Virus record (IMG/VR): IMGVR_UViG_3300023179_005186
Location: 251,723-315,722 of that record
DNA: 64,000 nucleotides
Strand: one strand, 5' to 3'
A program made the translations under genes and the position numbers. Below, piece by piece: positions 28,195 to 45,660 of the stretch (its first letter is position 1; each line of letters opens with the position of its first letter). The notes under the pieces are model-generated. The model saw only the letters and a list, made by a program, of their open reading frames with translations, did not search any database and was not told the origin of the DNA.

Positions 28195-28219
28195 CACCCA
28201 TTTACAAAAAAATGGGACA
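28195..28219 (+). repeat. Left TIR of element 1
   Basis: CACCCATTTACAAAAAAATGGGACA, inverted match to 32255-32279. Confidence 0.93.
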
Positions 28220-28222
28220 GTT

Positions 28223-29131: not shown

Positions 29132-29152
29132 ATATATAAATAATTTTATAAA

Positions 29153-29160
29153 AAAATTGA
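29153..29160 (+). promoter_or_regulatory. Early promoter AAAATTGA inside element 1
   Basis: Exact octamer 50 nt upstream of ATG 29211. Confidence 0.65.
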
Positions 29161-29210
29161 AAAACAGTTATAATAAATACTAAAATCATTAAAAAAAATA
29201 ATACTTAAAA

Positions 29211-29505
29211 ATGAGTTCAATTACTGAAGAAATACAACAATTACAAATAAAATTAAATGAATTAGAAAAGCAAAAAAAAAGAAAATGAAGAAAATAATAA
29301 AAAAACATCTATTAGTTATAATTTTGAAGTTATTAACAATTTATTAAATGAAAAGAAAATAGCAATTACAAATAATAGATATTCAAAATCTGTTCCATTA
29401 GCAAGATATTATGATCAAGAATTAGTTACACATCTTGAAGCAATTTATAATATACTGCAAGTTTTTAATGAGAGATTAGATAAATTAGAAAATAATAATA
29501 AATAA
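29211..29505 (+). pseudogene. Small coiled-coil cargo gene (about 97 aa) broken by a frameshift in an A9 tract; absent from the ORF track
   Basis: MSSITEEIQQLQIKLNELEKQKK, A9 at 29272-29280, continues in the +1 frame as ENEENNKK...RLDKLENNNK*. Confidence 0.7.
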
Positions 29506-29547
29506 TTTTAAACATTATTAAATTTAAAATAAATTTTTATAACAAAT

Positions 29548-29898
29548 TTATTTATGTCTAATTTGATTTATTTTATGCCTGTCAGTGATTAAATGACGTT
29601 CAAATAAATCTTTTGATATTGAACCATAATCACATATTTTACAATAATGTTTAAATCCTTTTTCTCTTTCTTCTAAAGTTGAATGTTCATTTAATATGTG
29701 TTGTTCTAAAATTAATCTATTTTTGGTTTTATAATCACATTTATCACATTTAGTAGGTTCTTTACAATCAGTTCTCTTTTTTCTTTGTCCTGTTTTATGT
29801 AATTCGGTTTTTATATGTGCTTCCCATCGTGCTTTTGTATTACATTTAAAATTACATTTTTCACAATTATATTTTATTTTTTTTTCATTATTTTCCAT
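29548..29898 (-). CDS. C2H2 zinc-finger protein (three fingers), element 1 cargo
   Basis: CEKC...HIKTELH, CDKC...HILNEH, CKIC...HLITDRH. Confidence 0.88.
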   Translation of the reverse strand: MENNEKKIKYNCEKCNFKCNTKARWEAHIKTELHKTGQRKKRTDCKEPTKCDKCDYKTKNRLILEQHILNEHSTLEEREKGFKHYCKICDYGSISKDLFERHLITDRHKINQIRHK

Positions 29899-30031
29899 TT
29901 AAATATATAAATTATATAAATATATTTTTAAATAAAATTTATAAATATATATTTTAACAGAAAATAAAATATTATAGTTTATTTAAATTGAAAATGATTT
30001 AAAAATTTATTTTTATCTAATATTATAATAT

Positions 30032-32221
30032 ATGAGTATTCCAAAAAAACCACCCGATAAATTTATCACCATTAAATATGTTTTGGATAAAATTATTATT
30101 AACGATAAACCTGATTGTGAATTAAAAAAAGATGATATTAAAACTATTTTAAATGATACTTGTTTTAGAACAAATCAAATTGTTATTCATACTTATCAAT
30201 TTTTAAGATTATGGATTTTAAATAAATATCATAATAAATTAGATATTCCTATTATCACAGAGGAGCTTATTAAAATGGTTATGAATACATTATCTATTAA
30301 AGATAATAGAGGTAATAAACCTACTGATGAAAATTTAATATTATTAAACGAATTTAATAAATTTTATGAAGAACATTATAAAAATTTAAATTATGAAAAT
30401 AAAATTAACAGTTCATATTTATCCCAAATAATTAATTCAATGGCTACTGATATACTTACCAACATTGAAAATAATATTAAAATGCATTTTTTAAAATATG
30501 TTAATAGATTTGTTAATTCATCATTTAAGAAAATAAATAATAATTTATTGGAAAAAGCAAAAGAAGGAACAAAAACAAAATTAAGAAAAGAATTAAATAA
30601 AGATCTATATGAAATTAAACAAGATTTAATTAATAATACATTGAAATCAAATGAAAAATATCATAAATGGATTAATTCCCATAGAGACAACATATTTCAT
30701 AAAGATTTTGTTAATTCCTATGAATTTGATATTCAAAATAATCCACAACGATATTTAAAATCAATGATTTATATGTGCGAACAAATAGAAAAATTAGAAA
30801 CAAAATCATTCCAGTTCTTTCCATTAAGAACAGATATTATAAACAAATTTATTCCGATTGACACCAAAAGTTTAATTGAATTATTTATTAAAAAAGATAA
30901 AGCAAAATATTTAGATGATGTTGAATCATATAAAGAACCTGTATGGTCTATGTTATTTGATATAAATAAAGATATGTTTAAACAATCAAATTATATATTT
31001 GATTATAAAATATATACAGATGGTTATTCGGTATCAATTCAAATGTTATTAAATGATAAAGTTAAAGATGAAAAACAAAAAAAACAAAATATGAAAAATA
31101 AAAGAAAAGAAAATAAAGAATTAACAAAAAATATGACTGAAGAACAAAAAACAGAATTTAAAAAGAAATGCGAGGAACAAAAGAAAAAACAAGATAAAGA
31201 GTTTAAATTAAAGTTAAAAGAGCAAAAAGATAAAGAGAAAGAAGAATTTAAAAAATTACCAAAAGAAGAACAAAATAAGATATTAGAAAAGAGAAAACAA
31301 GAAATTAAGGAAGCGAAAATATTAAATGGAACAGACTTTTTATATTTGGAAGATTTAAATGATAAACAATTAGAAGAAGTTAAAAATAATAATTTTTTAT
31401 GTTGCGATCCTGGAAAGAATACCTTACTCCATATGAAAGATAAAAATGGTAAAAAATACAGATATACAAACAGAAAGCATGCTAAATTAACTAAAAGATT
31501 AAAATATCAAAGACTTATTCAAAATTATAAAGATAAAAATGATATATCAAAAGTTGAAAATGAATTAACTAAATATAACTCAAGAACTTGTGATTTAAAT
31601 AAATTTAAAGAATTTATTAAAAATAAAAACAAAATTAATGCTATGTTATTTGAAAAGTATAATAAAGAAATATTTAGAAAATATAAATGGTATGGTTTTT
31701 TAAATAGAAAACACACAGAAACTAAAATGATAAAAGAAATTAAAAATACATTTGGTAAAAATTCAATAATATTTTATGGTGATTTTGGATTTAAAACAAA
31801 TTGTCATAAAGGTAATATATCAACACCAAATAATAGATTAAAAAGATTAATTGGAAAACAAATGAAATTATATAATTTAGATGAATTTAGAACCTCAAAA
31901 TTAAATTATAAAACAGAAGAAGTGTGTGAAAATTTATATTTACTAGATTTAAAAGGAAAGTCAAGAAAATTACATTCAGTTTTAACATATAAAATGGAAA
32001 ACAAACAAATTGGATGTATAAATCGTGATGAGAATGCGGTAAATAACATGATAAAAATAGTAAATCATTATCTGAATAAAAAAGAGAGATTATTAAAATA
32101 TCGAAGGGATTATGATTTAGAGAAAGGCGAATTAAAAGCTGAAACCAAACAAAAGGTGATAACCTCCATCAAAAATGACACTAAAAATCGGGAGGTCAAG
32201 TATCAACCATGCTCGAAATGA
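30032..32221 (+). CDS. Fanzor (TnpB-like) RNA-guided RuvC endonuclease
   Basis: TDGYSVS, RuvC-I CCDPG, YGDF, RuvC-II DEFRTSK, RuvC-III NRDENAVNNM; located next to the right TIR. Confidence 0.92.
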   Translation: MSIPKKPPDKFITIKYVLDKIIINDKPDCELKKDDIKTILNDTCFRTNQIVIHTYQFLRLWILNKYHNKLDIPIITEELIKMVMNTLSIKDNRGNKPTDENLILLNEFNKFYEEHYKNLNYENKINSSYLSQIINSMATDILTNIENNIKMHFLKYVNRFVNSSFKKINNNLLEKAKEGTKTKLRKELNKDLYEIKQDLINNTLKSNEKYHKWINSHRDNIFHKDFVNSYEFDIQNNPQRYLKSMIYMCEQIEKLETKSFQFFPLRTDIINKFIPIDTKSLIELFIKKDKAKYLDDVESYKEPVWSMLFDINKDMFKQSNYIFDYKIYTDGYSVSIQMLLNDKVKDEKQKKQNMKNKRKENKELTKNMTEEQKTEFKKKCEEQKKKQDKEFKLKLKEQKDKEKEEFKKLPKEEQNKILEKRKQEIKEAKILNGTDFLYLEDLNDKQLEEVKNNNFLCCDPGKNTLLHMKDKNGKKYRYTNRKHAKLTKRLKYQRLIQNYKDKNDISKVENELTKYNSRTCDLNKFKEFIKNKNKINAMLFEKYNKEIFRKYKWYGFLNRKHTETKMIKEIKNTFGKNSIIFYGDFGFKTNCHKGNISTPNNRLKRLIGKQMKLYNLDEFRTSKLNYKTEEVCENLYLLDLKGKSRKLHSVLTYKMENKQIGCINRDENAVNNMIKIVNHYLNKKERLLKYRRDYDLEKGELKAETKQKVITSIKNDTKNREVKYQPCSK

Positions 32222-32296
32222 GTGCAATTATACCTTTAATTTACAAAAAAAGAGTGTCCCAATTTTTTGTAAATGGGTGTAATATCACTTTTATAA
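32150..32296 (+). ncRNA. Putative omegaRNA of element 1 (scaffold to 32279, guide from the flank); boundaries approximate
   Basis: Stems 32152-57/32232-37, 32162-67/32191-96, 32211-14/32220-23 and 32239-50/32263-74; loop-loop pair GACACT/AGTGTC. Confidence 0.7.
32255..32279 (-). repeat. Right TIR of element 1
   Basis: TGTCCCAATTTTTTGTAAATGGGTG followed by TA. Confidence 0.93.
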
Positions 32297-32878: not shown

Positions 32879-33046
32879 TTAATCAATTGGAAAATTTTTA
32901 CATTTTGTATAATCGGGTCGATAATCATTACAATTACCATCTTCATTATAAATTTGATTAACATAAATAAAACCTTCTTTAGTATTTAATATTTTTATAA
33001 TAATAAGAATTAACAATAATAAAATAATAATATTATCTTTATCCAT
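32879..33046 (-). CDS. 55-aa TM peptide with a KEGF motif; absent from the ORF track
   Basis: MDKDNIIILLLLILIIIKILNTKEGF...C...C...*, same design as the N-terminus of 26741-27106. Confidence 0.6.
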   Translation of the reverse strand: MDKDNIIILLLLILIIIKILNTKEGFIYVNQIYNEDGNCNDYRPDYTKCKNFPID

Positions 33047-33156
33047 GATATAATAATATTGATAAAATATTTTTTATAATAAAATAAACTTATTGGGTGG
33101 AGAATTAAACTTTATAATTCCACTATAATAAAGTTTTTTTTTATATTATAAATTAT

Positions 33157-34311
33157 ATGGAAAAAAAATCACAATCTACTATTAATACTTCTAATAAAAA
33201 AAATTCAGATAATGAAAATTCATTATTACCATCAAAAAAAATGGAAATTAATTATGAAAATCTTCAAAAAAGTAAAAATTATGTTATTAAAAATAATTAT
33301 TGGAATGATAAACACGAATCAATTTTACAAAATTTACAAAAAAATTCTAATAAATTATACAGAGAATATCAAAAGGCTCATATTGTATATAAAAAAAAGT
33401 TAAGATTATACAGAATTCCAATTATTATAATGTCAGGTTTAAGTGGATTTCTATCTATTTCTAATAGTGGATATATACCAACTGACTATCAACAGTGGAT
33501 ATCATTATTTGTTGGTTTTGTAAATTTAATGGTAACAATAATTTCTTTAATAGAAAATTTTAAGAAAATAGATGTTAATGTTAATAAAACATACATATCA
33601 TACATGGAATTTAAGAAATTACACGATGAAATTTCCTTAATATTAAATACTCCACAAAATGAACGTGATGGAAATGGTTATGATGTTTCATTAATATTCT
33701 TTAATAGATATGAAGCATATATTGCAGATGCACCAATATTACAAAAAGTTATGCATGATTATTTAGATAATAATTCACCAGATAATAAAAGTCAAACAAT
33801 TATTGATAGTGGATCTGATGATTTAACTGATAATATTATTGTTATGAATGATGATGATATTGAATCTCGATACATTCCAAGTAAAGAAAAATTAAAACAA
33901 ATATTGTTTAATACTAAATCTGATAATTCAAATAAAATTAAAAATATTGATGTTTTTAAAAAAATTCAAGAAAATAAAATATCAAACAAAACAATAAATT
34001 CTGATCGTATAAAAAAAGTAAATAGATTTCAAGAACAATTTGAATCAATGGATCAAGAGGTTAATAAAAAAATAGATGAAAATATAAACAAAGTAAATTT
34101 AGAAAATAATTTAACAATAAATAAAGAAAATTTTCCTAAACTAAAAAATATTAAACCAAATTATGATGAAGAAATAATTTTTAATGAATTAACAGAAATT
34201 AAATTTAGTAATATAGATGATAATTTAATTAATTTAATTGAAGATTCAGGCGATGATTTAGTTGAAGAAGTTATAAAAAATAATGATTCTGATAGTTCAA
34301 CTGAATATTAA
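33157..34311 (+). CDS. SLATT-like 2TM protein with a low-complexity tail
   Basis: WNDKHESIL, RIPIIIMSGLSGF (TM1), SLFVGFVNLMVTIISLIENF (TM2), EISLIL...ER. Confidence 0.6.
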   Translation: MEKKSQSTINTSNKKNSDNENSLLPSKKMEINYENLQKSKNYVIKNNYWNDKHESILQNLQKNSNKLYREYQKAHIVYKKKLRLYRIPIIIMSGLSGFLSISNSGYIPTDYQQWISLFVGFVNLMVTIISLIENFKKIDVNVNKTYISYMEFKKLHDEISLILNTPQNERDGNGYDVSLIFFNRYEAYIADAPILQKVMHDYLDNNSPDNKSQTIIDSGSDDLTDNIIVMNDDDIESRYIPSKEKLKQILFNTKSDNSNKIKNIDVFKKIQENKISNKTINSDRIKKVNRFQEQFESMDQEVNKKIDENINKVNLENNLTINKENFPKLKNIKPNYDEEIIFNELTEIKFSNIDDNLINLIEDSGDDLVEEVIKNNDSDSSTEY

Positions 34312-34892
34312 AAATTATAATAAATTATAGAAATTGCTAATCCAAAAAAAAGTGTCCCAGTTCCAAATAATCTAGTATTTTTCATTACATTTATTAACTC
34401 ATTTTTACTTGGTTCATTTGAAACTGGACATGATTTTTTAAAAAAATCTAATGTTTGTGATTGATCTTTATTATAATATAATTCTTGACAACCCATATGT
34501 ATAAGAGATAATACTAATAATGTAATTATAAAAGGTAAAATCTCAAAAAATTTTTTTGAATTTATAATATACATAGCTGTTAAAATTGATAAAAATTTTA
34601 AGATATCTGAAATATGATCATAATAATCACCAAATATTGTTACCATATTATATTTTCTTGCCATATGTCCATCTAAACAATCAAAAAAATACGATACAAT
34701 TACAAAAAATGCTGCTAAATAATATTGTGATTTAAATAATAAGATAACAACAATTATTGCAACAATATTTGATAAAGTCGTAATTGTATTTGGTTGAAAA
34801 CCATAATCATAAACAACTGGTAATGTTATATCTGATAATTCTATTATATAATTGTCAAAAGGATTTTCTATTTCTATAGGTATTTTCCTCAT
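34308..34892 (-). CDS. CDP-alcohol phosphatidyltransferase
   Basis: PNTIT and the signature DCLDGHMARKYNMVTIFGDYYDHISD. Confidence 0.92.
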   Translation of the reverse strand: MRKIPIEIENPFDNYIIELSDITLPVVYDYGFQPNTITTLSNIVAIIVVILLFKSQYYLAAFFVIVSYFFDCLDGHMARKYNMVTIFGDYYDHISDILKFLSILTAMYIINSKKFFEILPFIITLLVLSLIHMGCQELYYNKDQSQTLDFFKKSCPVSNEPSKNELINVMKNTRLFGTGTLFFGLAISIIYYNF

Positions 34893-35018
34893 ATAAATTA
34901 TATTTATATTATAAAAAAATACATTACAAAATATTGAAATTTACATGCTAAAAATTTAAAAAAAAATAATATTTTAGAATGAAAATAATTATTTTTTTTT
35001 ATATAAGTAAACTTAATA

Positions 35019-37172
35019 ATGAATTTAAAAAAAGATAATGTAAAAGATGATTTAGAAAAAGAATTAAACTTGTTAGAAAATAATCAAGCAATTATAGATA
35101 TTGTTTTATCCATGGAACAAGAATTAATTGTTGAATCAAATAATAATATATTAGTTGATGCTGTTGCAGGTTCTGGGAAAACAACTACTATTTTACATAT
35201 GGCATTGAGACATCCAAACGCGAATATAATACAAATAACTTATAATAATATGTTAAAAAGAGAAGTTAGAAAAAAAGTAAATAGATTAGCAATTAAAAAT
35301 ATGATAATTCATACATATCATAGTTTAGCTGTAAATTTTTATGATGAATCAGCATATACAGATGAAGAAATAAAAAGATTATTGTTTCAAAATAAACCTA
35401 TAAAATATAAAGATATTAAACCAATTGATATTTTATTAATTGATGAAACTCAAGATATGGCTCAAGATTATTATAATTTAGTAAGAAAATTTATTAATGA
35501 TACAAAATCGATACCAAGAATCGTAATTTTAGGCGATAGATATCAAGCTATATATGAATTTAAGGGAGCTGATTCAAAATTTTTAACTTTAGCTGATAAA
35601 ATATGGAATATTGAATTTGAAAAGTTAAATTTAACAACATCATATAGATTAACCGATCAAATTTCATGGTTTGTAAATAAAATTATGTTGAATAAAAAAA
35701 GAATTTGTACAGTAAAATCTGGTCCTCCTGTAGATTATTATGTAGGTAATTCTTATACTCTATACAGAAAATTAGGTAAACAAATTAGATCAATGATTAA
35801 AAAAGAAGGAATTAAAGAAGAGGATATATTTATTTTATCACCTAGTATTAAATCATTAGAACCACCTTTTAAAAAATTAGAAAATTATTTAGTAAAACAT
35901 GGTCTAAAATGTATAACACCAGTATCAGATGATTCTAAGTTAGATGAAAAGGTAATATCAAATAAAATAGTTTTTACAACATATCATCAAGCAAAGGGTC
36001 GTGAAAGAAAAGTAATAATTTTATATAATTTTGATGATTCATATACACAATTTTTTTTAAAGTCAAATGATTCTAATAATATATGTCCAAATATTTTATA
36101 TGTGGGTGCTACTAGATCATCATATAAACTTATAGTTATTCAAGATAATAAATATAAACCATTAAATTTTTTAAATATTAAATATCTTAAACAAAATGAA
36201 AATTTAAATTATATTATTGTTAATGAACAAATTTTAGAAAATATTAATTTAGGATTAAAATCTACACAAATAAAAAAAACAAGTGTAACAGATTTAATTA
36301 AATTTTTAAATCCCAAAACTATTGATTTAATTCTAAATATTATTACTTATTCAAAAGAAAATAATTTATATGAAATAATTAAAAAACCATCTATAAAAAT
36401 AGATATACCTAATAAAATTAAAATTACAAATATTATTTCAAATAAAGAAGTTATTACATGGGAAGATGTTTCAGATTTAAATGGTCTTGTAATACCTGCT
36501 ATATATGAAAGAATTTTATTAAAAAAAAATTCTACAATTGAAAATTATTTAGAAACACAAATATCTGAATTAAATCCAATTTTAGATGATTTAAAAAAAT
36601 ATATTAAAAAATTAAAAATCCCTGCTACTAAACCTGAAGATTTTTTATTAATTGGTAATATATATCAGGCATTAAATAATAAATTATATGCAAAAATTGC
36701 TCAAATAAAAAAATATGATTGGTTAGATATAAATCATGTTTTTCAATGTCATAATTATATGAATTTTATTTTAGATCCAAATATTAAATTTGAAGTTCCT
36801 CTAATATCATCAAATCAAGAAAATTGTTTTATTTACGAACATAAAGAATTTGGTAATATACATATTACATCAAGACTAGATGCCATTGATTCTAAAAATA
36901 TTTGGGAATTTAAATGTGTAGATCATTTAAATTTAGATCATAAATTACAATTAATTATATATTATTGGATTTATTCTAAATGTTTTATGCAAAAAATTTA
37001 TGGAAAAAAAGATTTTATTTTGTTAAATATTAAATCTGGTGAAATGTTAAAATTAAAACCAGATAATTATTTAATTGAAAATATAATTGAATTAATCTTA
37101 CAGGATAAGTATGGTGAAAAAAAACAATTAGATGATGATGAATTTATAAATTTAATTGTAAATAAAAATTGA
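35019..37172 (+). CDS. UvrD-like SF1 helicase with a C-terminal PD-(D/E)XK nuclease
   Basis: AVAGSGKT, TYH, IDETQD, LGDRYQAIY, SYR, TYHQAKGRE, LYVGATR; C-terminal RLDAI...WEFKC...LQLIIY. Confidence 0.85.
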   Translation: MNLKKDNVKDDLEKELNLLENNQAIIDIVLSMEQELIVESNNNILVDAVAGSGKTTTILHMALRHPNANIIQITYNNMLKREVRKKVNRLAIKNMIIHTYHSLAVNFYDESAYTDEEIKRLLFQNKPIKYKDIKPIDILLIDETQDMAQDYYNLVRKFINDTKSIPRIVILGDRYQAIYEFKGADSKFLTLADKIWNIEFEKLNLTTSYRLTDQISWFVNKIMLNKKRICTVKSGPPVDYYVGNSYTLYRKLGKQIRSMIKKEGIKEEDIFILSPSIKSLEPPFKKLENYLVKHGLKCITPVSDDSKLDEKVISNKIVFTTYHQAKGRERKVIILYNFDDSYTQFFLKSNDSNNICPNILYVGATRSSYKLIVIQDNKYKPLNFLNIKYLKQNENLNYIIVNEQILENINLGLKSTQIKKTSVTDLIKFLNPKTIDLILNIITYSKENNLYEIIKKPSIKIDIPNKIKITNIISNKEVITWEDVSDLNGLVIPAIYERILLKKNSTIENYLETQISELNPILDDLKKYIKKLKIPATKPEDFLLIGNIYQALNNKLYAKIAQIKKYDWLDINHVFQCHNYMNFILDPNIKFEVPLISSNQENCFIYEHKEFGNIHITSRLDAIDSKNIWEFKCVDHLNLDHKLQLIIYYWIYSKCFMQKIYGKKDFILLNIKSGEMLKLKPDNYLIENIIELILQDKYGEKKQLDDDEFINLIVNKN

Positions 37173-38593: not shown

Positions 38594-38706
38594 CTATATG
38601 TTACTAATATCCATTTTACTTTTTATTATATTAATAATTTCGTTAGTAACTTTACTAATTGTGATTTTTATTAATATATCAATTCTTTTTTTTTTATTAC
38701 TTTTTA
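38594..38706 (-). pseudogene. 3' end of the gene interrupted by element 2
   Basis: After excision ...ELTIL continues as KSNKKKRIDILIKITISKVTNEIINIIKSKMDISNI* with the stop at 38594. Confidence 0.75.
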
Positions 38707-38731
38707 CACCTTTGCACATTTAAAATGCTGA
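38707..38731 (+). repeat. Left TIR of element 2
   Basis: CACCTTTGCACATTTAAAATGCTGA, inverted match to 44746-44770. Confidence 0.93.
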
Positions 38732-38748
38732 CCTTTTAAATATGCAAA

Positions 38749-39765
38749 TTATTTATAATTTTTTAATGTTTTTCTTCTATTTGAAGGTTTCTTAACATAT
38801 TTTTCAGTTCTATTATATGTTCCTTTTATGATATTTTCATATTTTTCTTTTGGTATTTCTTTAACTACCTTATTAATATTTTCTTTTAGTTCTTTATGAG
38901 TTAAACCATCTAATTTATACAATCTTGATTTCATCATACTAAAGTAATTTTCAATACTATTTGTAAAATGTTGATATGGAACACTATATAATAATGTGTT
39001 ATGCTTATTCACTAATTCCTTTATTTTTGCGTTTCTATGACTACTTGCATTATCTAAAATTATTAATTTATTTTTATATTTTGTAGTAATGTGTTTTTCT
39101 AAAAATTCATATAATCTATCACTATCAATGCCACCTTTTTCATATAAATCCCAACCTAAAACACCATTATAAGATATTGCAAATATTCCAGTATATTTTT
39201 TGAATACTTCTTGTGATTGTGTTTTTATTACACATCTTTTACCTAATTCACTATAATATTGATGTCTTTTCTGTAATCCACTAATACTTGTCTCATCAAT
39301 ACATATAATATCTTCTAATTTATGCTTTTTTATTTCATCATAGAATTCTTTTAATTTTTGATTTATATTTATTTCTTTTCCAAATCTCTTTTCTGGTTCA
39401 TGTCTTATTCTTGTTATTTTTAATGTAATATTGTTATCATTAACAATTCTATTGATATGAAAACGACTTAATTCAATCTTAAAATTTTCTTTTAATTTAT
39501 GTTTTAATTCTGTAATTGTAATTGTTTTATTCTTTTTAATTTCATATAATAAAAATTTAACATGTTCTTTATGAACTTTATATGCAACTGGTTTTCTATT
39601 TTCTCTTTTTATTTCACCATCTTTTTTATATTTTTCAACCCATCTTATTAAACTTCTTGGACTACATTTAAATATTTCACATACTTCTAATTGTAATTTA
39701 TCACCGACCAAATAATATTCTACGGCAGATAATTTATAATCTTCGCTTTTATGTTTAGATGTCAT
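38749..39765 (-). CDS. IS630/Tc1-like DD33E transposase
   Basis: N-terminal HTHs, ICIDET, ILDNA, 33 residues, NSIE. Confidence 0.93.
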   Translation of the reverse strand: MTSKHKSEDYKLSAVEYYLVGDKLQLEVCEIFKCSPRSLIRWVEKYKKDGEIKRENRKPVAYKVHKEHVKFLLYEIKKNKTITITELKHKLKENFKIELSRFHINRIVNDNNITLKITRIRHEPEKRFGKEININQKLKEFYDEIKKHKLEDIICIDETSISGLQKRHQYYSELGKRCVIKTQSQEVFKKYTGIFAISYNGVLGWDLYEKGGIDSDRLYEFLEKHITTKYKNKLIILDNASSHRNAKIKELVNKHNTLLYSVPYQHFTNSIENYFSMMKSRLYKLDGLTHKELKENINKVVKEIPKEKYENIIKGTYNRTEKYVKKPSNRRKTLKNYK

Positions 39766-39829
39766 ATACTTAATATTATGGCATAAAATATTTAAAATTA
39801 TGTTATAATATAATTATAGTAAATAAAAT

Positions 39830-40094
39830 ATGAATGAAGAAATTGATATTTTGAAACTTGAAATTGAAGAACTCAAAAAAAAAGAATGTTGAGTTAGAAG
39901 AAAAATTAAAGTTATATACTAATCCAGAACGGAATAAAAAATATTATGAAAAGAATAGTAATGTTGTTAAAGAAAAAGCAAAAACGTATATGGAGAAAAT
40001 AAAAGAAACAAATCCAGAAAAATTAAAAGAATGGAGACATACAGCATACTTAAATAGAAAGGCAAAATTAAAAAGTCAAACTGAAATTAATTAA
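39830..40094 (+). pseudogene. Small coiled-coil/basic cargo gene (about 87 aa) with a frameshift in an A9 tract
   Basis: ATG 39830 MNEEIDILKLEIEELKK, A9 at 39875-39883, continues in the +1 frame as NVELEEKLKLYTNPER. Confidence 0.7.
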
Positions 40095-40755
40095 TAAAAT
40101 TTTCATATTCATTATTTTTACACATATAAATATTTTGAATAATATTGTCTGTTTTTATTTTTTCAATATTATTTATTAATTCAGTTTTCCAATCATATAT
40201 ATCGTTGAATACATCTGATTGTAATATACGAATAACAGAATAACCATTATTATTTGCGCATTTTTCTTTGTATTTATCATTTTCTAATTGTTCTTCTGGA
40301 GATGACCAATTGCTTACTTGTTCAAAATGTTGTCTTCCATCAAGTTCAATAATAATTTTATTTTCTTCAATACAAAAGTCAAAAGGAATAAATCTTATAT
40401 TTTTACACCAAACAACTTTATATTGCTTTATTATATTTACATATATATTATATAAATATTCATATAATATTGTTTCAGTTTTATTTTGACAATGAGGACA
40501 ACCAGTATTATTAGATAAATATTTATTATAATCATTTCCACATTTATCGCAATCAAATATAAATTCTTTATAACAAACTTTAAAAACATTTCGTGGTTTA
40601 ATAATATTTTTTATGCTCCACTTTATAACATCTTTGTGAGATGCATATGATTTATTGAAACAATCAAGACAGTCTTCATTATAACATAATTTTTTATTTG
40701 CACAATAAGGACACCAAACACCATTGTTACAATAAAGAAATATTATAAAGCAATT
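40087..40755 (-). pseudogene. 3' part of a zinc-ribbon-repeat plus Vsr/DUF559-like endonuclease; absent from the ORF track
   Basis: Open frame with no usable start: WCPYCANKKLC, KSYASHK, WSIKN, CDKC, CPHC, KTE, FIPFDFCI, IIIELDGRQHF, GYSVIRI. Confidence 0.85.
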
Positions 40756-40803
40756 TTAACTTTTTAAGCATTATAAATTTTTTATCTAATATACTATTAT
40801 AAT

Positions 40804-41333
40804 ATGAATATTTTTAAAACATTAATACATAAGAAAATCAAATATAAATATGTTTTTGTGATATTTGCGGACTAATTTCATTTTTTAAATTAGATAAAAA
40901 ATTTATTACTAATTTTGAAAGTTTATTAAAGAAACATAGACCAAGTGATATAAATTTTACTTATACAAAAATTTTAGATGAAGATATTTTGTCATACCTA
41001 AATTATAATCATAAAGTTTTTTATCAAATTATATACAACCCTGTTAATTATGATATTATTACAATTGCTAGTATATCAATGATTTCGATCGATAAATGTG
41101 TTTTAACAATGGTACACACTAATGAGAAATACAGAAATCTAAAATTTTGTCAAAAAAATATTAATTTACTTATTAAAAATATGTTTGATAATTTTAAAAA
41201 TATTAAAAAATATATTTTGTATGTCGATAAGGACAATATATATGCAATTAAATGTTATGAAAAATGTAATTTTATTATAATTGAACTTAAGAAAGATAAT
41301 AAATATTTAATGGAATTAAATAAAATAAGATAA
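40804..41333 (+). pseudogene. GNAT acetyltransferase with a frameshift near 40853-40857 (captured DNA)
   Basis: VHTNEKYRNLKFC and LYVDKDNIYAIKCYEKCNF; upstream ATG 40804 is one base short of frame. Confidence 0.7.
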
Positions 41334-41344
41334 ATTTACTGATA

Positions 41345-42474
41345 TTAAATTAGTTCACCAACACCAACAATTGTTATCATTGGTTGTTTTCTACAAATTA
41401 AAATTTTTGAATCTTTACTAATGCATGTTGGTTTAATTAATTGTATTGAAAACCTTGTTCCTTTAATTTTTGTAAGTCGAGCTTCAGATGTCATATTTTC
41501 AATTTGTAAAAATATTTGATCTCCATTTTTTGGTTCCCATATGTCATTAATTTTTGTAAATTGAATATCAATGTCATGATAAACCTCTGGTAATTGTCCT
41601 ACAGGTCCTAGTACATTTCCACATAACATATTATTACCTTTACAAAAATACGGATCAACAGTTGTACGAATAGCAACTAATCCACCTGGATTTATTTCTT
41701 CAATAATATTATTATTAGTTTCAAATGATAATGTTGTTAAAATTGGTTCAGAAGTATATCTTCCATTTTTACCTTTTGTTAAAATACCAGGTCTTATTTC
41801 AACTTCATCATTAATTTTTAAATTTCCTGAAACTAATGTTCCTCCTAAACATCCACCTAATACTTCATTATATGGCGTACCTGGTTTATTAATATCAAAT
41901 GTTCTTGTAATTCTGAATAATGTATTTCCTGTTGAAGTTTGATTATTACTAAAATATTTATCAATTGCTTCAATAAGAAAATTTTTACCACAACTGTTTG
42001 TAAATGATGTGGGTATAATAATATTAGGTATAATTCCTAATTCTAATAAAATATCATTTAATTCATTATATCTTTCAATAACAATACTTTTACTTTGTAA
42101 ATCACATTTATTCAAACAAATAATTATATTGGAGATATTTGCCAATTTAGCTGTTAATAAATGTTGTCTTAGTTGAGGTTTTTCTTTTAAACTGGTTTCT
42201 ACTGAAACAATTACGATTGCTCCTTTCATTAACGCTACTGAACTCATCATTGTTGTTATTAATTCCTGATGCCCAGGGCAATCGGCAAATGAAATATATT
42301 TAATTAAATTACAATTATTACTACATGTTTCACAATTATATTCTAATAATTTTTCTCCTGATGAATATTTAGCTTGACAAATATCACACTTCCAAATTTT
42401 TAAATTTGCATAACCAGCATTAATTGTAATATTTTTAATTAATTATCTACTATCTCGTTGTGTTTTTCTCCGGT
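41345..42474 (-). pseudogene. EIF2S3: 5'-truncated translation initiation factor eIF2-gamma (captured DNA)
   Basis: NITINAGYAN, Zn knuckle CDIC/CETC, SFADCPGH, NKCD, RTFDINKPG, GGCLGG, EIRPG; no G1 P-loop; in-frame TAA at 42443-42445. Confidence 0.9.
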
Positions 42475-42572
42475 TTAATATTTTCAGGTTTTAATTCATT
42501 TTTATCGCTCCAATATTTTGCTTTTTCATGTGATGCAAATGATTTTTCAAAAGGTATTTTATTATCTGTCAT
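42474..42572 (-). pseudogene. 5' end of the split zinc-ribbon endonuclease gene
   Basis: MTDNKIPFEKSFASHEKAKYWSDKNELKPENIK matches the internal repeat KSYASHKDVIKWSIKNIIKPRNV of 40087-40755. Confidence 0.8.
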
Positions 42573-42610
42573 TATATAATTTAATAATTATTAATTTATA
42601 TAATTTTATA

Positions 42611-42618
42611 TCAATTTT
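42611..42618 (-). promoter_or_regulatory. Early promoter AAAATTGA for the element-2 endonuclease gene
   Basis: Octamer 38 nt upstream of ATG 42572. Confidence 0.7.
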
Positions 42619-42681
42619 TTATTAATAATTTTTAATGCGTAAAACTATTTAAAATATAATCTTTAGTAATAATATATAGAA

Positions 42682-44676
42682 ATGAAAAAATCAAAACCAA
42701 AAGTTAAAGAAAAGAAAAAAGATGAAGAAAATTTTGATTACATGAAAACTAATAAGGACAATATTAAGAATGTTATAAGAGATAATGATTTATTACCAGT
42801 TATTAATGATATTACCATAAGAACCAATAAAATTGTTATTCATTCATACCAATTCTTAAAATTATATTTATTGCATCTTTATGAAAATAATCAACCTTTT
42901 CCAGTTTTAGATAAAGAATATATTTGTGATATTTTTAAAGTTATTACAAAACGTAAATGTAATAGTGGTGGTTATACTGAAGAAAAAATGCCTCAACAAT
43001 TAAAAACACTAAATGACTTTTATAAAAATCATTATTTATTAACTATTGCTAATAATGAAGTTCTTTATTATGATAAATTATCATATATTCTTGCTTATGA
43101 AGCGATAGATATGATTACTAATATTACAAATAATATTCAAGAACATTTTATTGACCATCTTAATAGATATGTTAATATTGTATTTGATATTAAGGCAAAA
43201 CGTGAAGAAATAACTAAAAATAATAAAGATAAGGAAATTAGAAAGCAATTACATAAGGTATTATATGAAGAAATAAATAAAGTTAAGAAAGATTTAATTA
43301 CATTTGGAGAATTTACAAGTGATGTTAAATATCATAATTGGATTAAGGAACAAAAATTAAAATTATTTCCAAATAAAACAGAATTTGAAGAAAATAATAT
43401 TTATTATGAACTTAAATTAAATACACAATACTTTCTTTATGGTATGTTTCATATTTCAACTGAATTAGAAAAAAACAATAATATAAGAATTCAAAATGAT
43501 GAAAAACAAATAAGATTATTTAATGTATTACCATTAAGAACTAATATTATTCCTAAAAATGTATGTATAGACACATGTGGATTAATTCAAAATTTTATGG
43601 GTGATGAATACGATAGCAAATTATTAACAACTTATAAAAAAGAAAATAAATATTTTGAATTATGGAATAAATATTTTAAGTTAAATAAAAGAGTATTCAA
43701 AAAAGGTAAAAATTATACATTTTCTTACATGATAAGAACTGATGGTATATCATGCTGTGTATTATTTGTAAAAGTTGATAAAAATGGAAAACCATTAGCA
43801 AAAACATATGCAAATAAAAAATGTTGTCAAGAAGAAAATATTGATTATATTGAAAAAGCAAATGTAGATAATATTAAACATAAAAAGTTTGTTGTTGCTG
43901 ACCCCAATTACAGCGATTTAATATATTGTGGTTATAAAGATGAAAATGATAATTTAATAACATTTCGTTATACACAAAACCAAAGAAGATTAGAAACACG
44001 AATGAAAAAATATAGTAAAATTAAAGATAAATTAAATAAAGAAACTATTATAAATGAAAAGTCAGTAAAAGAATTAGAAACAACACTATCAAAATTAAAT
44101 TCAAAAACATGTTCTTATGACAAATTTAAAACATATTGTGTTGAAAAGAATAAATTAAATTATCAACTATATTCACATTATGAACAAAGATGTTTTAGAA
44201 AATTTAAATTAAATGCATTTACAAATACTCAAAAAAGCGAAAATAAAATGATAAATAATTTTCAAAAAAAATATGGAAAACCAGAAGAAACTATATTTGT
44301 TATGGGAGATTACGATAAAGGCGATTATAATATGAAGGGAAAAGAACCAGTAATATGTAAAAAATTTAGAAGAATATTTAGAAATGCTGGTTATACCACA
44401 TTTTTAGTAAATGAATTTAGAACATCAAAATTATGTAATTGTTGTAATGCAGAATTAGAATATTTTTTGGAAAGACCAAGCAAGAAACCAAAATTAATAA
44501 AAGAGGGAAAAACAGAAATATGTCATGGATTATTACGATGTAAGTCGGTTAAGCATAAAAGCGAAATATTCCATAACAGAGATAAGAATGCTGTGCAAAA
44601 TATGTTAAATATAGTCAAATCGGTTCTACGAACAGGAAAACGACCAGATATATTTTGTAGAGAAATACATTCTTAA
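42682..44676 (+). CDS. Fanzor (TnpB-like) RNA-guided RuvC endonuclease
   Basis: RTDGISC, RuvC-I VADPN, MGDY, RuvC-II NEFRTSKLCNCC, HGLLRC, RuvC-III NRDKNAVQNM. Confidence 0.93.
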   Translation: MKKSKPKVKEKKKDEENFDYMKTNKDNIKNVIRDNDLLPVINDITIRTNKIVIHSYQFLKLYLLHLYENNQPFPVLDKEYICDIFKVITKRKCNSGGYTEEKMPQQLKTLNDFYKNHYLLTIANNEVLYYDKLSYILAYEAIDMITNITNNIQEHFIDHLNRYVNIVFDIKAKREEITKNNKDKEIRKQLHKVLYEEINKVKKDLITFGEFTSDVKYHNWIKEQKLKLFPNKTEFEENNIYYELKLNTQYFLYGMFHISTELEKNNNIRIQNDEKQIRLFNVLPLRTNIIPKNVCIDTCGLIQNFMGDEYDSKLLTTYKKENKYFELWNKYFKLNKRVFKKGKNYTFSYMIRTDGISCCVLFVKVDKNGKPLAKTYANKKCCQEENIDYIEKANVDNIKHKKFVVADPNYSDLIYCGYKDENDNLITFRYTQNQRRLETRMKKYSKIKDKLNKETIINEKSVKELETTLSKLNSKTCSYDKFKTYCVEKNKLNYQLYSHYEQRCFRKFKLNAFTNTQKSENKMINNFQKKYGKPEETIFVMGDYDKGDYNMKGKEPVICKKFRRIFRNAGYTTFLVNEFRTSKLCNCCNAELEYFLERPSKKPKLIKEGKTEICHGLLRCKSVKHKSEIFHNRDKNAVQNMLNIVKSVLRTGKRPDIFCREIHS

Positions 44677-44788
44677 AATTCATATCCGTTTCAAGACGGA
44701 TTATAATCAAATTTTTGCATTTTTGTTTATTTTTTCGTCGTTAATTCGGCGTTTTAAATGTGCAAAGGTGTAAAATAGTTAATTCTTT
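44677..44788 (+). ncRNA. Putative omegaRNA of element 2 (scaffold to 44770, guide from the flank); boundaries approximate
   Basis: Hairpin ATCCGT 44684-89/ACGGAT 44696-701; CGTCG 44736-40/CGGCG 44747-51; enclosing stem TTTGCA 44714-19/TGCAAA 44761-66. Confidence 0.65.
44746..44770 (-). repeat. Right TIR of element 2
   Basis: TCGGCGTTTTAAATGTGCAAAGGTG followed by TA. Confidence 0.93.
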
Positions 44789-45660
44789 CTTTTTATCTTG
44801 TGTATTTTTATTCTCTAATAATTTTTTCTCAATTTCATTTACAGAAATAACTTTGACTGATTCTATATTTGCTTTTTTAGATTTCTTCTTTTTAAAATTA
44901 TTTATAATTTCACAATATTTTAAAGATTCATTTACATCAAATCCATCATCATCTTTATGAAGATAAGGACAACCTAAATTGATACGACGACAGCCTTCAA
45001 TTTTAGATTCATCAGCACAAGATTTTTTTTTACTAATGTTTCTTGATTCTAAAGACATTCTTTCAGAAGATAATCTTTTCCTATTTTCACAAAGTTTTTT
45101 TAATGCAATATCTGCATCAAATTTATGATTACAAATTATATCATCTCTAATTAAAATCAGTACATCAAAAACAGTTTGAATTATCGCCAATGCTGTATTT
45201 TCATCAGTTCTGGTTATATTATTATTCATTATATTATTATCTAAATGAACTCCCATACATCCAAAATCTCTTAAAATTCTTAAAGGATTAGAAAGAATTT
45301 TATTCATTTGAGTTATTTTATGAATAGCTTCTCCCAAATTAATTGGTCTTTCTCCTAACATATAGGTACAAACAGCTTCAACGATAACTCTGGCTTCCAT
45401 TGCAACAGGATCAAATAATTGTTTTGATGCATAATCCTGAATATTCCACATGGATTTTGCCAATAAAATTACTACTTTTTTATAATCATCAAGCTTAAAT
45501 CCTTTATTAATTGATGATTCAGATATGGCCATAACGCCAATAAACCAAAATAAATCTCTAGTATCTTCCCATTCAAAAAAATCAAACTTTAGCTTTCCCT
45601 TTTTTTTTCAAGAGGAGGACCTGGGAAATGCCAAGGTAATGTATTTTTATCATACTCCAT
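44771..45660 (-). pseudogene. Gene interrupted by element 2: DUF4145/HEPN-like domain plus a CCCH-like finger
   Basis: ARVIVEAVC, LRDFGCMGVH, CADESKIEGCRRINLGCPYLH; likely true start ATG 45660, one base off at the A9 tract 45600-45608; AAAATTGA at 45749-45756. Confidence 0.6.

What the first reader, a model, noticed from the sequence alone, without database searches (positions are those of the whole stretch)
40087..42618. Element 2 captured GNAT plus eIF2-gamma DNA inside its own endonuclease gene
Seen: an early promoter (42611-18) and ATG 42572 begin MTDNKIPFEKSFASHEKAKYWSDKNELKP, the same repeat found in the start-less endonuclease frame at 40755-40087. Between the two halves lies about 1.7 kb (roughly 40740-42474) holding a GNAT gene and a convergent eIF2-gamma cut just after its P-loop, with a nonsense codon at 42443-45. 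Part of one zinc-ribbon repeat is missing, so this looks like a replacement, not a clean insertion. Inference: template-switch capture during double-strand-break or gap repair, letting a Fanzor transposon transduce a translation-factor gene. The ORF track shows neither endonuclease half.
Basis: partly seen in the sequence, partly recalled or inferred. Interest (0 to 1): 0.85.

Follow-up and report, generated by a model that had tools for sequence, protein, structure and literature searches.

The report
Giant-virus transposon captured two viral genes
A 6-kb jumping gene in a freshwater giant virus lost 300 bases of its own endonuclease gene and gained 1.7 kb of copied viral DNA: a whole but broken acetyltransferase gene and most of a translation-factor gene. 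This shows one way such elements can shuffle core viral genes.

Summary
Window 38702-44775 is a 6,074-bp transposon bounded by terminal inverted repeats. It carries an IS630/Tc1-like DDE transposase, a conserved 78-aa ORF, a zinc-ribbon/DUF559 endonuclease gene and a Fanzor1 gene.

Sister elements carry the endonuclease intact (L001, 347 aa). Here its codons 35-134 (300 bp) are replaced by 1,745 bp (about 40729-42473). The insert holds a full-length GNAT gene with a -1 frameshift, an 11-nt spacer, and nt 63-1197 of an eIF2-gamma gene.

The eIF2-gamma piece matches an intact gene at a conserved native locus (Lon - eIF2-gamma - 148 aa - PP28 - PolB) except for three lesions: A6 to A5, a GAA-to-TAA nonsense change, and a 3-nt deletion. 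GNAT is never next to eIF2-gamma at seven native loci, so the insert is probably a composite of two donors.

Eight further independent assemblies show the same structure, so it is not a misassembly.

The event fits ectopic DNA capture during break repair. Template switching versus end-joining is unresolved, because microhomology is about 2 nt. The cargo is dead and no mobilisation after capture was seen.

This is a new variant of known transposon gene-fragment capture. Moderate interest.

The parts
38702..38731 (.). Left terminal inverted repeat of Element 2
   Evidence: 30 nt, 93% complementary to 44746-44775. The 24-mer TTTTACACCTTTGCACATTTAAAA occurs only at these two places in the window, with 0 expected by chance. 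It occurs exactly in more than 119 giant-virus stretches in IMG/VR.
38749..39765 (-). IS630/Tc1-like DDE transposase, 338 aa, intact ORF
   Evidence: PF13358 DDE_3 (E=2e-15) plus HTH domains. 79-93% identical copies sit in sister elements.
39858..40094 (+). Conserved 78-aa element ORF (orf78), function unknown
   Evidence: Found next to the transposase in 14 loci that carry the TIR, at 46-83% identity.
40087..40728 (-). 3' part of the element's endonuclease gene: last zinc-ribbon repeat plus the DUF559/Vsr-like nuclease domain. It has no start codon.
   Evidence: Frame open from 40755. PF04480 and PF14311. 80% identical to P0001 residues about 135-347. Nucleotide homology to L001 1402-2605 begins at 40728.
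40729..40803 (+). 75 nt upstream of the captured GNAT. The first 53 nt have no identified origin.
   Evidence: Homology to the L003 GNAT locus begins at 40782, which is 22 nt before the ATG. The junction with the endonuclease lies at 40728-40732.
40804..41333 (+). Full-length GNAT acetyltransferase pseudogene with a -1 frameshift in the T-run at 40853-40857
   Evidence: PF00583. Alignment to homologues of 173-181 aa. Comparison of the ATG and frame with L003.
41334..41344 (.). 11-nt spacer between the convergent stop codons of GNAT and eIF2-gamma
   Evidence: ORF coordinates. Homology to the native eIF2-gamma locus ends at the stop codon.
41345..42475 (-). eIF2-gamma fragment, gene nt 63-1197. 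It lacks the start codon and P-loop. Lesions: A6 to A5 at 42464-42468, GAA to TAA at 42443-42445, and a 3-nt deletion between 41733 and 41732.
   Evidence: 99.6% identical to L138 and L002 over 1,135 nt, with no other substitution. The closest intact protein is P0258, 398 aa.
42474..42572 (-). 5' part of the endonuclease gene (codons 1-33). It then runs out of frame into the eIF2-gamma DNA and stops at 42450-42452.
   Evidence: ORF. Aligns to residues 1-34 of P0001 and to L001 1009-1101 at 97% aa identity. Nucleotide homology to L001 ends at 42474.
42611..42618 (-). AAAATTGA, a Mimiviridae-type early-promoter octamer upstream of the endonuclease start
   Evidence: Positional enrichment upstream of other ORFs, P=5e-7. 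Also present upstream of the L152 endonuclease gene.
42682..44676 (+). Fanzor1 RNA-guided nuclease gene, 664 aa, intact ORF
   Evidence: Matches Spizellomyces punctatus Fanzor1 (8GKH, E=1.4e-44) and two other Fanzor1 structures. Weak match to PF07282. 71-88% identical copies sit in sister elements.
44746..44775 (.). Right terminal inverted repeat of Element 2
   Evidence: In the sister strain L131, similarity to the window stops at 44777 and a different flank follows (the 3' end of an RPB2 gene).

Best explanation
Element 2 (38702-44775) is a copy of a transposon family bounded by terminal inverted repeats that is widespread in freshwater Mimivirus-like giant viruses. The normal layout is: TIR, DDE transposase, orf78, zinc-ribbon/DUF559 endonuclease, Fanzor1, TIR.

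In this copy the endonuclease gene was broken between codons 34 and 135. The 300 bp in between were lost, and the gap was filled with 1,745 bp of ectopic viral DNA. The filling has two pieces. One is a complete GNAT gene with 75 nt of its upstream flank, antisense to the endonuclease. The other is the 3' 95% of an eIF2-gamma gene, in the sense orientation and ending at its stop codon.

The most likely process is repair of a double-strand break or gap by copying or ligating non-homologous DNA available in the virus factory. It used almost no homology at the joints and probably drew on two separate donors.

The result is non-functional. The endonuclease is split and has no start codon for its nuclease half. 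The eIF2-gamma piece lacks its start and P-loop, is out of frame with the endonuclease start, and carries a nonsense codon. The GNAT is frameshifted.

The transposase, Fanzor1 and both TIRs are intact, so the element could in principle still move and carry the cargo with it.

Shown: the replacement, the donor-type locus, the recency of the event, and the reality of the junctions. Inferred: the break, the repair pathway, the two-donor origin, and any later mobility.
For: **The replacement.**
- Sister contig L001 aligns to the window on both sides of the insert: L001 2-1101 = window 43571-42474 at 83%, and L001 1402-2605 = window 40728-39529 at 86%. It carries an intact 347-aa endonuclease. So 300 bp were replaced by 1,745 bp.

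**The endonuclease belongs to the element.**
- The same four-gene layout and exact 24-nt TIRs recur in L152, L180, L176, L217 and L220.

**The eIF2-gamma donor.**
- The fragment equals nt 63-1197 of the L138/L139 allele with only three lesions.
- The intact gene sits between Lon and PolB in all relatives examined.

**Composite origin.**
- The 148-aa gene, never GNAT, follows eIF2-gamma at seven loci whose eIF2-gamma is 92-100% identical.
- A GNAT relative sits in an unrelated backbone locus.

**The junctions are real.**
- Identical sequence was assembled independently in ERZ27247967 (168-kb contig), ERZ3460577 (120 kb), JGI 3300008962, 3300014050, 3300032219 and 3300012000, ERZ28594536, and Logan SRR7812697.

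**The joint.**
- The right junction shares only 'AA' between the two parents.

**The lesions.**
- Two of the three eIF2-gamma lesions and the GNAT frameshift are slippage events in short repeats (A6, ATTATT, T6), with no other substitution in 1,135 nt. This fits a recent event and possibly error-prone repair synthesis.

**A precedent in the family.**
- In L200 the whole endonuclease gene is replaced by an unrelated convergent gene pair.
Against: - No reads could be laid (one search failed). The junctions therefore rest on assemblies, and no copy-number or variant evidence is available.
- The eIF2-gamma homology ends exactly at its stop codon, and the GNAT 3' end is also complete, only 11 nt away. 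This would be an odd coincidence for random break points. It would be natural if the two genes were neighbours in an unsampled donor.
- No close intact GNAT (above 67% identity) was found, so that donor and two of the three joints cannot be examined.
- Slippage mutations are also the commonest spontaneous changes in DNA that is 80% A+T, so the lesion pattern does not prove mutagenic synthesis.
- Nothing identifies what made the break.
Confidence: 0.75

Rival explanations
1. Single contiguous capture. In the true donor genome, GNAT and eIF2-gamma were convergent neighbours, and one 1.75-kb stretch was copied into the break. This gives two joints and one donor.
For: Both genes have complete 3' ends with stop codons only 11 nt apart, the tight packing typical of native giant-virus gene pairs. 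The site downstream of eIF2-gamma varies among more distant relatives: nothing in L007, a 282-aa gene in L008, and 148 aa plus PP28 in L002 and L138. The L200 cargo is also a convergent pair.
Against: All seven native loci with 92-100% identical eIF2-gamma have the 148-aa gene 23 nt downstream, and none has GNAT. The fragment is nucleotide-identical to the L138 allele, yet homology stops at the stop codon. The only GNAT context seen is elsewhere, in an FtsH-XRN-GNAT-RNase H arrangement. GNAT has 17% G+C and the eIF2-gamma piece 26%.
Confidence: 0.2
2. Metagenome misassembly: a chimeric contig joins a transposon from one virus to eIF2-gamma and GNAT DNA from another.
For: The window comes from a metagenome contig (Ga0214923_10000006). 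Short contigs L132 and L133 diverge from the window inside the insert, at 41725 and 41198.
Against: Identical junctions appear in assemblies from at least eight other samples made with different assemblers, including contigs of 168 kb and 120 kb. There is no shared repeat at the joints that could mislead an assembler.
Confidence: 0.02
3. Two-element scenario. GNAT and eIF2-gamma are resident genes of this virus, flanked by two transposon copies. Each copy later lost its inner half by deletion, which mimics one element with an insert.
For: The family is multicopy, and a second, roughly 10% divergent copy seems to exist in the same virus lineage (L131).
Against: This needs two independent deletions whose ends fall 300 bp apart in the same gene and leave a perfectly complementary element. 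The flanks of the element (UvrD helicase, DUF218) show no synteny with the native eIF2-gamma locus. The eIF2-gamma piece is truncated and identical to an allele that sits in the Lon-PolB locus elsewhere.
Confidence: 0.03

Closest known systems
Fanzor1 plus IS630/Tc1/mariner transposase elements of giant viruses (for example families A-C in the Chlamydomonas endogenous giant virus, bioRxiv 10.1101/2024.09.03.611062; Fanzor1-Mariner/Tc1 association, PMC10530073)
   Same: A TIR-bounded element that encodes a DDE (IS630/Tc1-type) transposase and a Fanzor1 nuclease. Full-length, Fanzor-only and miniature forms all exist.
   Different: This family also carries a zinc-ribbon-repeat/DUF559 (or DUF723-type) endonuclease and a 78-aa ORF as regular genes. 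This copy also holds captured viral gene DNA. I found neither feature in the passages of those papers that I searched with key terms.
Transduplication: gene-fragment capture by DNA transposons (Pack-MULEs, Helitrons, Pack-CACTA in plants). This comparison is from my own knowledge.
   Same: Fragments of host-genome genes, often from more than one locus and often non-functional, lie between the ends of a DNA transposon while the parent gene stays intact elsewhere.
   Different: The 'host genome' here is a giant virus. The carrier is an autonomous Tc1/IS630-type element with Fanzor. The capture replaced part of one of the element's own genes. Spread of the loaded element to new sites has not been seen.
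Templated or filler-DNA insertions at repaired double-strand breaks (microhomology-mediated break-induced replication, synthesis-dependent strand annealing with template switches, end-joining capture of DNA fragments). This comparison is from my own knowledge.
   Same: A deletion at the recipient site, insertion of ectopic sequence from one or more loci in either orientation, 0-2 nt of homology at the joints, and an unchanged donor.
   Different: None of the enzymes or intermediates is known for giant-virus factories. The pathway cannot be told apart from sequence alone here.
Submariner MITEs and other Tc1/mariner-derived elements in Pandoravirus and other viral genomes (PMC4495683, PMC6004678)
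   Same: Cut-and-paste-type DNA transposons and their miniature derivatives colonise giant-virus genomes. Miniature TIR pairs 140-260 bp apart occur in this family too.
   Different: As far as I know, those elements carry no cargo and no Fanzor.

Membership tests
Fanzor1-bearing IS630/Tc1/mariner-type TIR transposon | DDE transposase of the IS630/Tc1 (DDE_3) type | tested here: met
   PF13358, E=2e-15, with N-terminal HTH domains; intact 338-aa ORF.
Fanzor1-bearing IS630/Tc1/mariner-type TIR transposon | Fanzor1 (TnpB-like RuvC) nuclease gene | tested here: met
   phmmer match to SpuFz1 8GKH (E=1.4e-44), PpFz1 (E=2.7e-34) and GtFz1 (E=6e-19). Weak match to PF07282. Catalytic residues were read by eye only.
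Fanzor1-bearing IS630/Tc1/mariner-type TIR transposon | Terminal inverted repeats bounding the genes, recurring in other genomic contexts | tested here: met
   30-nt TIRs. The exact 24-mer occurs in more than 119 IMG/VR stretches, with inverted pairs 0.14-5.3 kb apart. The L131 flank changes at the TIR end.
Fanzor1-bearing IS630/Tc1/mariner-type TIR transposon | TA target-site duplication | tested here: inconclusive
   TA abuts the right end (44776-44777), but CT abuts the left end. Across 126 TIR ends the adjoining dinucleotide varies: TT 26, TA 18, AT 18. The true terminus may lie a few bases further out.
Fanzor1-bearing IS630/Tc1/mariner-type TIR transposon | Guide RNA (fRNA/omega RNA) encoded at the Fanzor-side end | not tested
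   100 nt lie between the Fanzor stop codon and the TIR end. They were neither folded nor compared.
Transduplication / Pack-type gene-fragment capture | Fragment of a non-transposon gene inside the element ends | tested here: met
   eIF2-gamma nt 63-1197 and a GNAT lie between the TIRs.
Transduplication / Pack-type gene-fragment capture | Intact parent gene retained at its own locus | tested here: inconclusive
   An intact, identical allele exists at the Lon-PolB locus in other assemblies. Whether it lies in the same genome is unknown. The samples are disjoint, and some runs hold element-region words without the window's backbone. The GNAT parent was not found.
Transduplication / Pack-type gene-fragment capture | Loaded element present at more than one site (mobilised after capture) | tested here: not met
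   All assemblies that reach the flanks share the same left flank. The one different right flank (L131) comes with a 10% divergent Fanzor 3' end, which indicates another copy or a chimera.
eIF2-gamma (functional translation initiation GTPase) | Complete ORF with the G1 P-loop | tested here: not met
   Starts at codon 21, after GSVADGKS. Nonsense at codon 32. Out of frame with the upstream ATG.
GNAT acetyltransferase (functional) | Acetyltransf_1 fold in an intact ORF | tested here: not met
   The domain is present (PF00583, E=2e-6), but a -1 frameshift after codon 18 leads to a stop.
Microhomology-mediated template switching (MMBIR/FoSTeS-like) | Microhomology at every joint and templated segments from nearby or ectopic loci | tested here: inconclusive
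   The right joint shares 2 nt (AA), which is not above chance in DNA that is 80% A+T. The other two joints cannot be scored without the GNAT donor.

The most novel reading that the evidence does not exclude
The eIF2-gamma DNA comes from a different giant virus than the one now carrying the element. Under this reading, this widespread Fanzor1/IS630 family has TIRs conserved to the base across very different giant viruses and a swappable central gene slot. It would then act as a vehicle that picks up core viral genes, including translation genes, and moves them between co-infecting giant viruses.

Supporting hints:
- The nine samples with the split element and the four with the native identical gene do not overlap.
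- A megahit contig of 168 kb runs straight through a stretch that would be a 713-nt perfect repeat if both copies were in one genome.
- Runs X6, X7, X9 and X11 hold 20-34% of the element-region words but none of the window's backbone.
- The eIF2-gamma piece has 26% G+C against 18.6% for the window.
- L200 shows a second cargo swap in the same slot.
Probability: 0.3. Interest if true: 0.75.

Novelty: new variant of a known kind. Interest (0 to 1): 0.55.

Why it matters
How giant viruses acquire and reshuffle their cell-like genes, especially translation genes, is a long-running debate. Mechanisms are mostly inferred from phylogeny. This case is recent and resolved to the base.

A core translation gene, copied without a single silent change, sits inside an apparently still mobile transposon. 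The intact sister element and the donor-type locus are both available for comparison.

The case shows that illegitimate, break-associated capture operates in giant-virus genomes, and that Fanzor1/IS630 elements can hold about 1.7 kb of foreign cargo.

It also shows that this transposon family normally carries a third nuclease, a zinc-ribbon/DUF559 endonuclease, in a slot that is sometimes overwritten. That slot is a tractable starting point for asking what the nuclease does and why it is a hotspot.

The cargo here is dead, so the direct biological effect on this virus is probably nil.

Tried and rejected
- **Read evidence.** There is therefore no read-level check of junctions, depth or variants. 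Independent assemblies were used instead.
- **Donor inside the window or its contig.** Self-BLAST of 39700-45000 found no second copy. The 315-kb contig has no intact eIF2-gamma, no PolB and no Lon.
- **Apparent eIF2-gamma match in Element 1 (29839-29895).** This is a C2H2 zinc-finger ORF, a chance low-complexity match.
- **GNAT vacated from a native site next to the window's FtsH-like gene.** L286 proteins show no synteny with the window. Rejected.
- **Linking the window to a PolB-bearing bin.** G+C comparison and BLAST against L102 and L109 were uninformative.
- **Using the UvrD helicase to find close relatives.** Only 32% identical hits were returned.
- **In-frame endonuclease-eIF2-gamma fusion protein.** The frames differ by one base, with or without the A-run deletion, and stop codons follow. 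Rejected from the sequence.
- **Retrocopy origin of the 5'-truncated eIF2-gamma.** There is no poly(A) tract and no target duplication at the 3' joint. Rejected.
- **TA target-site duplication.** Not resolved.
Full report
**Source and setting.** The window has 18.6% G+C. It is the last 64 kb of a 315,722-bp freshwater metagenome contig, Ga0214923_10000006, which is also IMGVR_UViG_3300023179_005186. Gene content is that of a Mimivirus-like giant virus: an FtsH-like protease, a UvrD helicase, glycosyltransferases and ankyrin proteins. The octamer AAAATTGA sits 33-54 nt upstream of many ORFs. No tRNA genes were found.

**Checking the observation.**
- ATG 42572 on the minus strand opens a 40-aa ORF, and AAAATTGA lies 38 nt upstream of it.
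- The frame 40755-40087 is open for 222 codons without a usable start codon. It carries a DUF4379 zinc ribbon and a DUF559 (Vsr-like) nuclease domain.
- The short ORF matches the repeat inside that frame.
- Between the two pieces lie a GNAT on the plus strand and an eIF2-gamma on the minus strand. The eIF2-gamma lacks its start codon and P-loop and has TAA at 42443-42445.

**The two pieces are one gene.**
- A search with the start-less frame returned 793 homologues, mostly 340-390 aa long.
- The closest, P0001 (347 aa, 80% identical), begins MTEDNKIPFEKSFASHEKAKYWSEKNELKPENIK. This is the window's 40-aa ORF almost residue for residue.
- Its contig, L001, aligns to the window on both sides of the insert: L001 2-1101 with window 43571-42474 (83%), and L001 1402-2605 with window 40728-39529 (86%).
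- L001 has Fanzor, an intact endonuclease, an 89-aa ORF and the start of the DDE transposase in the same order.
- So 300 bp (codons 35-134, about 1.3 zinc-ribbon repeats) were replaced by 1,745 bp.

**The carrier is a real transposon, and the endonuclease is one of its genes.**
- Inverted repeats of 30 nt (93% complementary) at 38702-38731 and 44746-44775 bracket the transposase, orf78, the split endonuclease and Fanzor.
- The 24-nt core of the repeat occurs exactly in more than 119 giant-virus stretches in IMG/VR. Some are inverted pairs 4.9-5.3 kb apart (full elements), one pair is 2.3 kb apart (Fanzor only), and some are 140-260 bp apart (miniature elements).
- Among 11 loci that hold both Fanzor and orf78, the slot between them contains:
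  - the same DUF4379/DUF559 endonuclease in five;
  - a DUF723-type repeat nuclease in four;
  - nothing in one;
  - an unrelated convergent pair in L200 (a P-loop kinase-like gene and a 174-aa ORF).
- In L200 the flanks match L001 right up to the ends of the endonuclease gene, so the whole gene was replaced.
- The Fanzor is a Fanzor1: it matches 8GKH with E=1.4e-44. The transposase is of the DDE_3 type.
- Fanzor1 plus IS630/Tc1/mariner elements in giant viruses are already described.

**Anatomy of the insert, read on the endonuclease sense strand.** After codon 33 (42474) come three parts.
- *The eIF2-gamma piece.* Nucleotides 63-1197 of an eIF2-gamma gene occupy 42475-41345, in the same orientation but one base out of frame.
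  - Against the intact gene in L138 and L139 there are only three differences. An A6 run is now A5 (42464-42468). G94T turns GAA into TAA (42445). One ATT of an ATTATT repeat is lost (between 41733 and 41732). There is no other substitution in 1,135 nt.
  - Homology ends exactly at the stop codon.
- *An 11-nt spacer.*
- *The GNAT, on the other strand.* It is complete, from ATG 40804 to the stop codon at 41331-41333, with 75 nt of upstream sequence. One base is missing at the T-run 40853-40857, so the frame closes after 23 codons.
- All three genes are therefore dead. The longest ORF left in the eIF2-gamma piece (301 aa from Met98) lacks the G1-G3 motifs.

**Where the pieces came from.**
- Proteins identical or nearly identical to the eIF2-gamma piece (P0258, P0121) are encoded at a conserved locus: RFC, epimerase, Lon on the minus strand, eIF2-gamma, a 148-aa gene, PP28 on the minus strand, then PolB.
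- Relatives with 92-96% identical eIF2-gamma have the same Lon, eIF2-gamma, 148-aa arrangement.
- More distant relatives keep eIF2-gamma between Lon and PolB, with a variable gene after it.
- GNAT is never there.
- The GNAT family is rare, with 14 proteins found. The best intact relative is 67% identical (L003), where it abuts a 127-nt remnant of a Fanzor gene. A 50% identical relative lies in an ordinary FtsH, XRN, GNAT, RNase H backbone. IMG/VR holds no other copy.
- I therefore read the insert as a composite of two donors. The rival is an unsampled donor in which the two genes are neighbours. The two complete 3' ends only 11 nt apart would make more sense under that rival.

**Is it a misassembly?** No reads could be laid. 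However, the same sequence, including both outer junctions and the inner joint, was assembled independently in:
- ERZ27247967 (168,696-bp megahit contig; 3 differences in 12 kb);
- ERZ3460577 (120,623-bp contig);
- JGI 3300008962, 3300014050, 3300032219 and 3300012000;
- ERZ28594536;
- Logan SRR7812697.

There is no repeat at the joints that could mislead an assembler.

**Mechanism.**
- At the right joint, the window follows L001 up to ...ATATTAAA and follows L138 from CCGGAG.... The two parents share only AA there, or an imperfect TTAA.
- The left joint lies within TGTAA (40727-40731). It cannot be scored without the GNAT donor.
- Four features together are the signature of illegitimate repair of a break or gap with ectopic DNA. 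They are a 300-bp loss at the recipient, two foreign segments in opposite orientations, almost no homology, and an unchanged donor. The repair could be by template switching during repair synthesis or by ligation of free fragments.
- The lesion pattern (three slippage events, one G-to-T change, no silent change) fits low-fidelity synthesis. It equally fits ordinary decay of A+T-rich DNA.
- What made the break is unknown. The family's slot is overwritten in at least one other member (L200), so it may be break-prone.

**Same genome or another virus?** This could not be settled.
- The 315-kb contig lacks PolB, Lon and an intact eIF2-gamma, so the native locus could sit elsewhere in the same genome.
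- Four observations point to a different genome:
  - The nine samples that yielded the split element and the four that yielded the at-least-99% identical native gene do not overlap.
  - Long de Bruijn contigs pass through what would be a 713-nt perfect repeat.
  - Several runs hold 20-34% of the element-region words (the eIF2-gamma piece is 28% of that stretch) but none of the backbone words.
  - The eIF2-gamma piece has 26% G+C, close to the 23% of its native contig and well above the window's 18.6%.
- I put the chance that the donor was a different virus or strain at about 0.55-0.6.
- No copy of the loaded element was seen at a second site. The one discordant flank (L131) comes with a Fanzor 3' end that is about 10% divergent, so it reflects another family member or a chimera.

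**Comparison with what is known, and verdict.**
- The carrier belongs to the known kind 'Fanzor1 plus IS630/Tc1 element of giant viruses'. TIRs, the transposase, Fanzor1 and multicopy spread were all met. The TA duplication was unresolved, and the guide RNA was not tested.
- The event works like plant transduplication (Pack-MULE or Helitron capture) and like filler-DNA insertion at repaired breaks.
- It fails one Pack-type criterion, spread of the loaded element. The criterion that the parent gene is in the same genome remains open.
- A full-text search for transduplication together with Nucleocytoviricota found nothing.
- I rate it a new variant of a known kind, real and well documented. Interest is moderate because the cargo is non-functional and mobility is unproven. 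Interest would be higher if the inter-virus origin were confirmed.

Noticed in passing
window 28190-32284: Element 1 is a second, only distantly related Fanzor1/IS630-type element. It has 39-nt TIRs (90% complementary) at 28190-28228 and 32246-32284. It carries a DDE transposase (302 aa, 35% identical to Element 2's), a 116-aa C2H2 zinc-finger ORF where Element 2 has the endonuclease, and a 729-aa Fanzor (about 30% identical).
   Followed up: partly
L145-L224 (IMG/VR loci): The exact 24-nt TIR core TTTTACACCTTTGCACATTTAAAA is shared by more than 119 giant-virus stretches, and the sampled loci span 18-37% G+C. Even elements whose Fanzor is only 22-31% identical share it. Miniature pairs 140-260 bp apart occur in L159, L173 and L177, and a Fanzor-only 2.3-kb form occurs in L145. 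This suggests frequent exchange of the family between viruses.
   Followed up: partly
L200:5755-7127 (GVMAG-S-1101165-51): In this sister element the whole endonuclease gene is replaced by a convergent pair: a P-loop kinase-like ORF (195 aa) and a 174-aa cysteine-rich ORF. The flanks are 89-97% identical to L001 up to the ends of the gene.
   Followed up: partly
L148, L149, L155, L164 (slot between Fanzor and orf78): The slot can instead hold a different repeat nuclease. It has 4-9 repeats of a '...HGD.YDYSK..Y....I.C..HG.F.Q.P..HL.G.GC.KC' unit (DUF723/DUF4379-like) in front of a nuclease-like C-terminal domain (Vsr/DUF559-like by my reading of the sequence). In L155 and L164 it is in the opposite orientation.
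   Followed up: no
L131:1-830 (ERZ3460577 NODE_294), matching window 44238-44777: This otherwise 99.9% identical strain is about 10% divergent over the last 540 bp of Fanzor. Beyond the TIR it continues into the 3' end of an RNA polymerase subunit 2 gene instead of the window's flank. Either a second element copy recombined with this one, or the contig is chimeric at a repeat.
   Followed up: partly
L132:1847-1984 and L133:1407-1535: Two short contigs from other samples follow the window through the right junction, then diverge into unmatched sequence inside the insert, at window 41725 and 41198. L132 also has clustered SNPs. These may be structural variants of the locus or low-coverage chimeras.
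   Followed up: no
L003:463-589 next to L003:625-1146: The closest intact GNAT relative (67% identical) lies 36 nt from a 127-nt remnant of a Fanzor gene that is 82% identical to window 44248-44382. This is a second case of this rare GNAT family joined to the interior of a Fanzor-element gene.
   Followed up: no
window 44741-44777: The last 12 or so codons and the stop codon of the flanking 263-aa ORF (44741-45532, minus strand) lie inside the element's right end. The insertion apparently replaced the C-terminus of that gene.
   Followed up: no
native eIF2-gamma locus, ERZ21989563 contig: The PolB next to the donor-type eIF2-gamma gene is 1,828 aa and has an intein hit in one assembly, but is 1,696 aa in L002. 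The intein is therefore present or absent among near-identical strains.
   Followed up: no
(runs X4, X13, X16): In several runs the backbone stretch 33000-37000 is held at about twice the word share of the element stretch 39500-43500. Some populations of this virus may lack the element or carry a different version of it.
   Followed up: no
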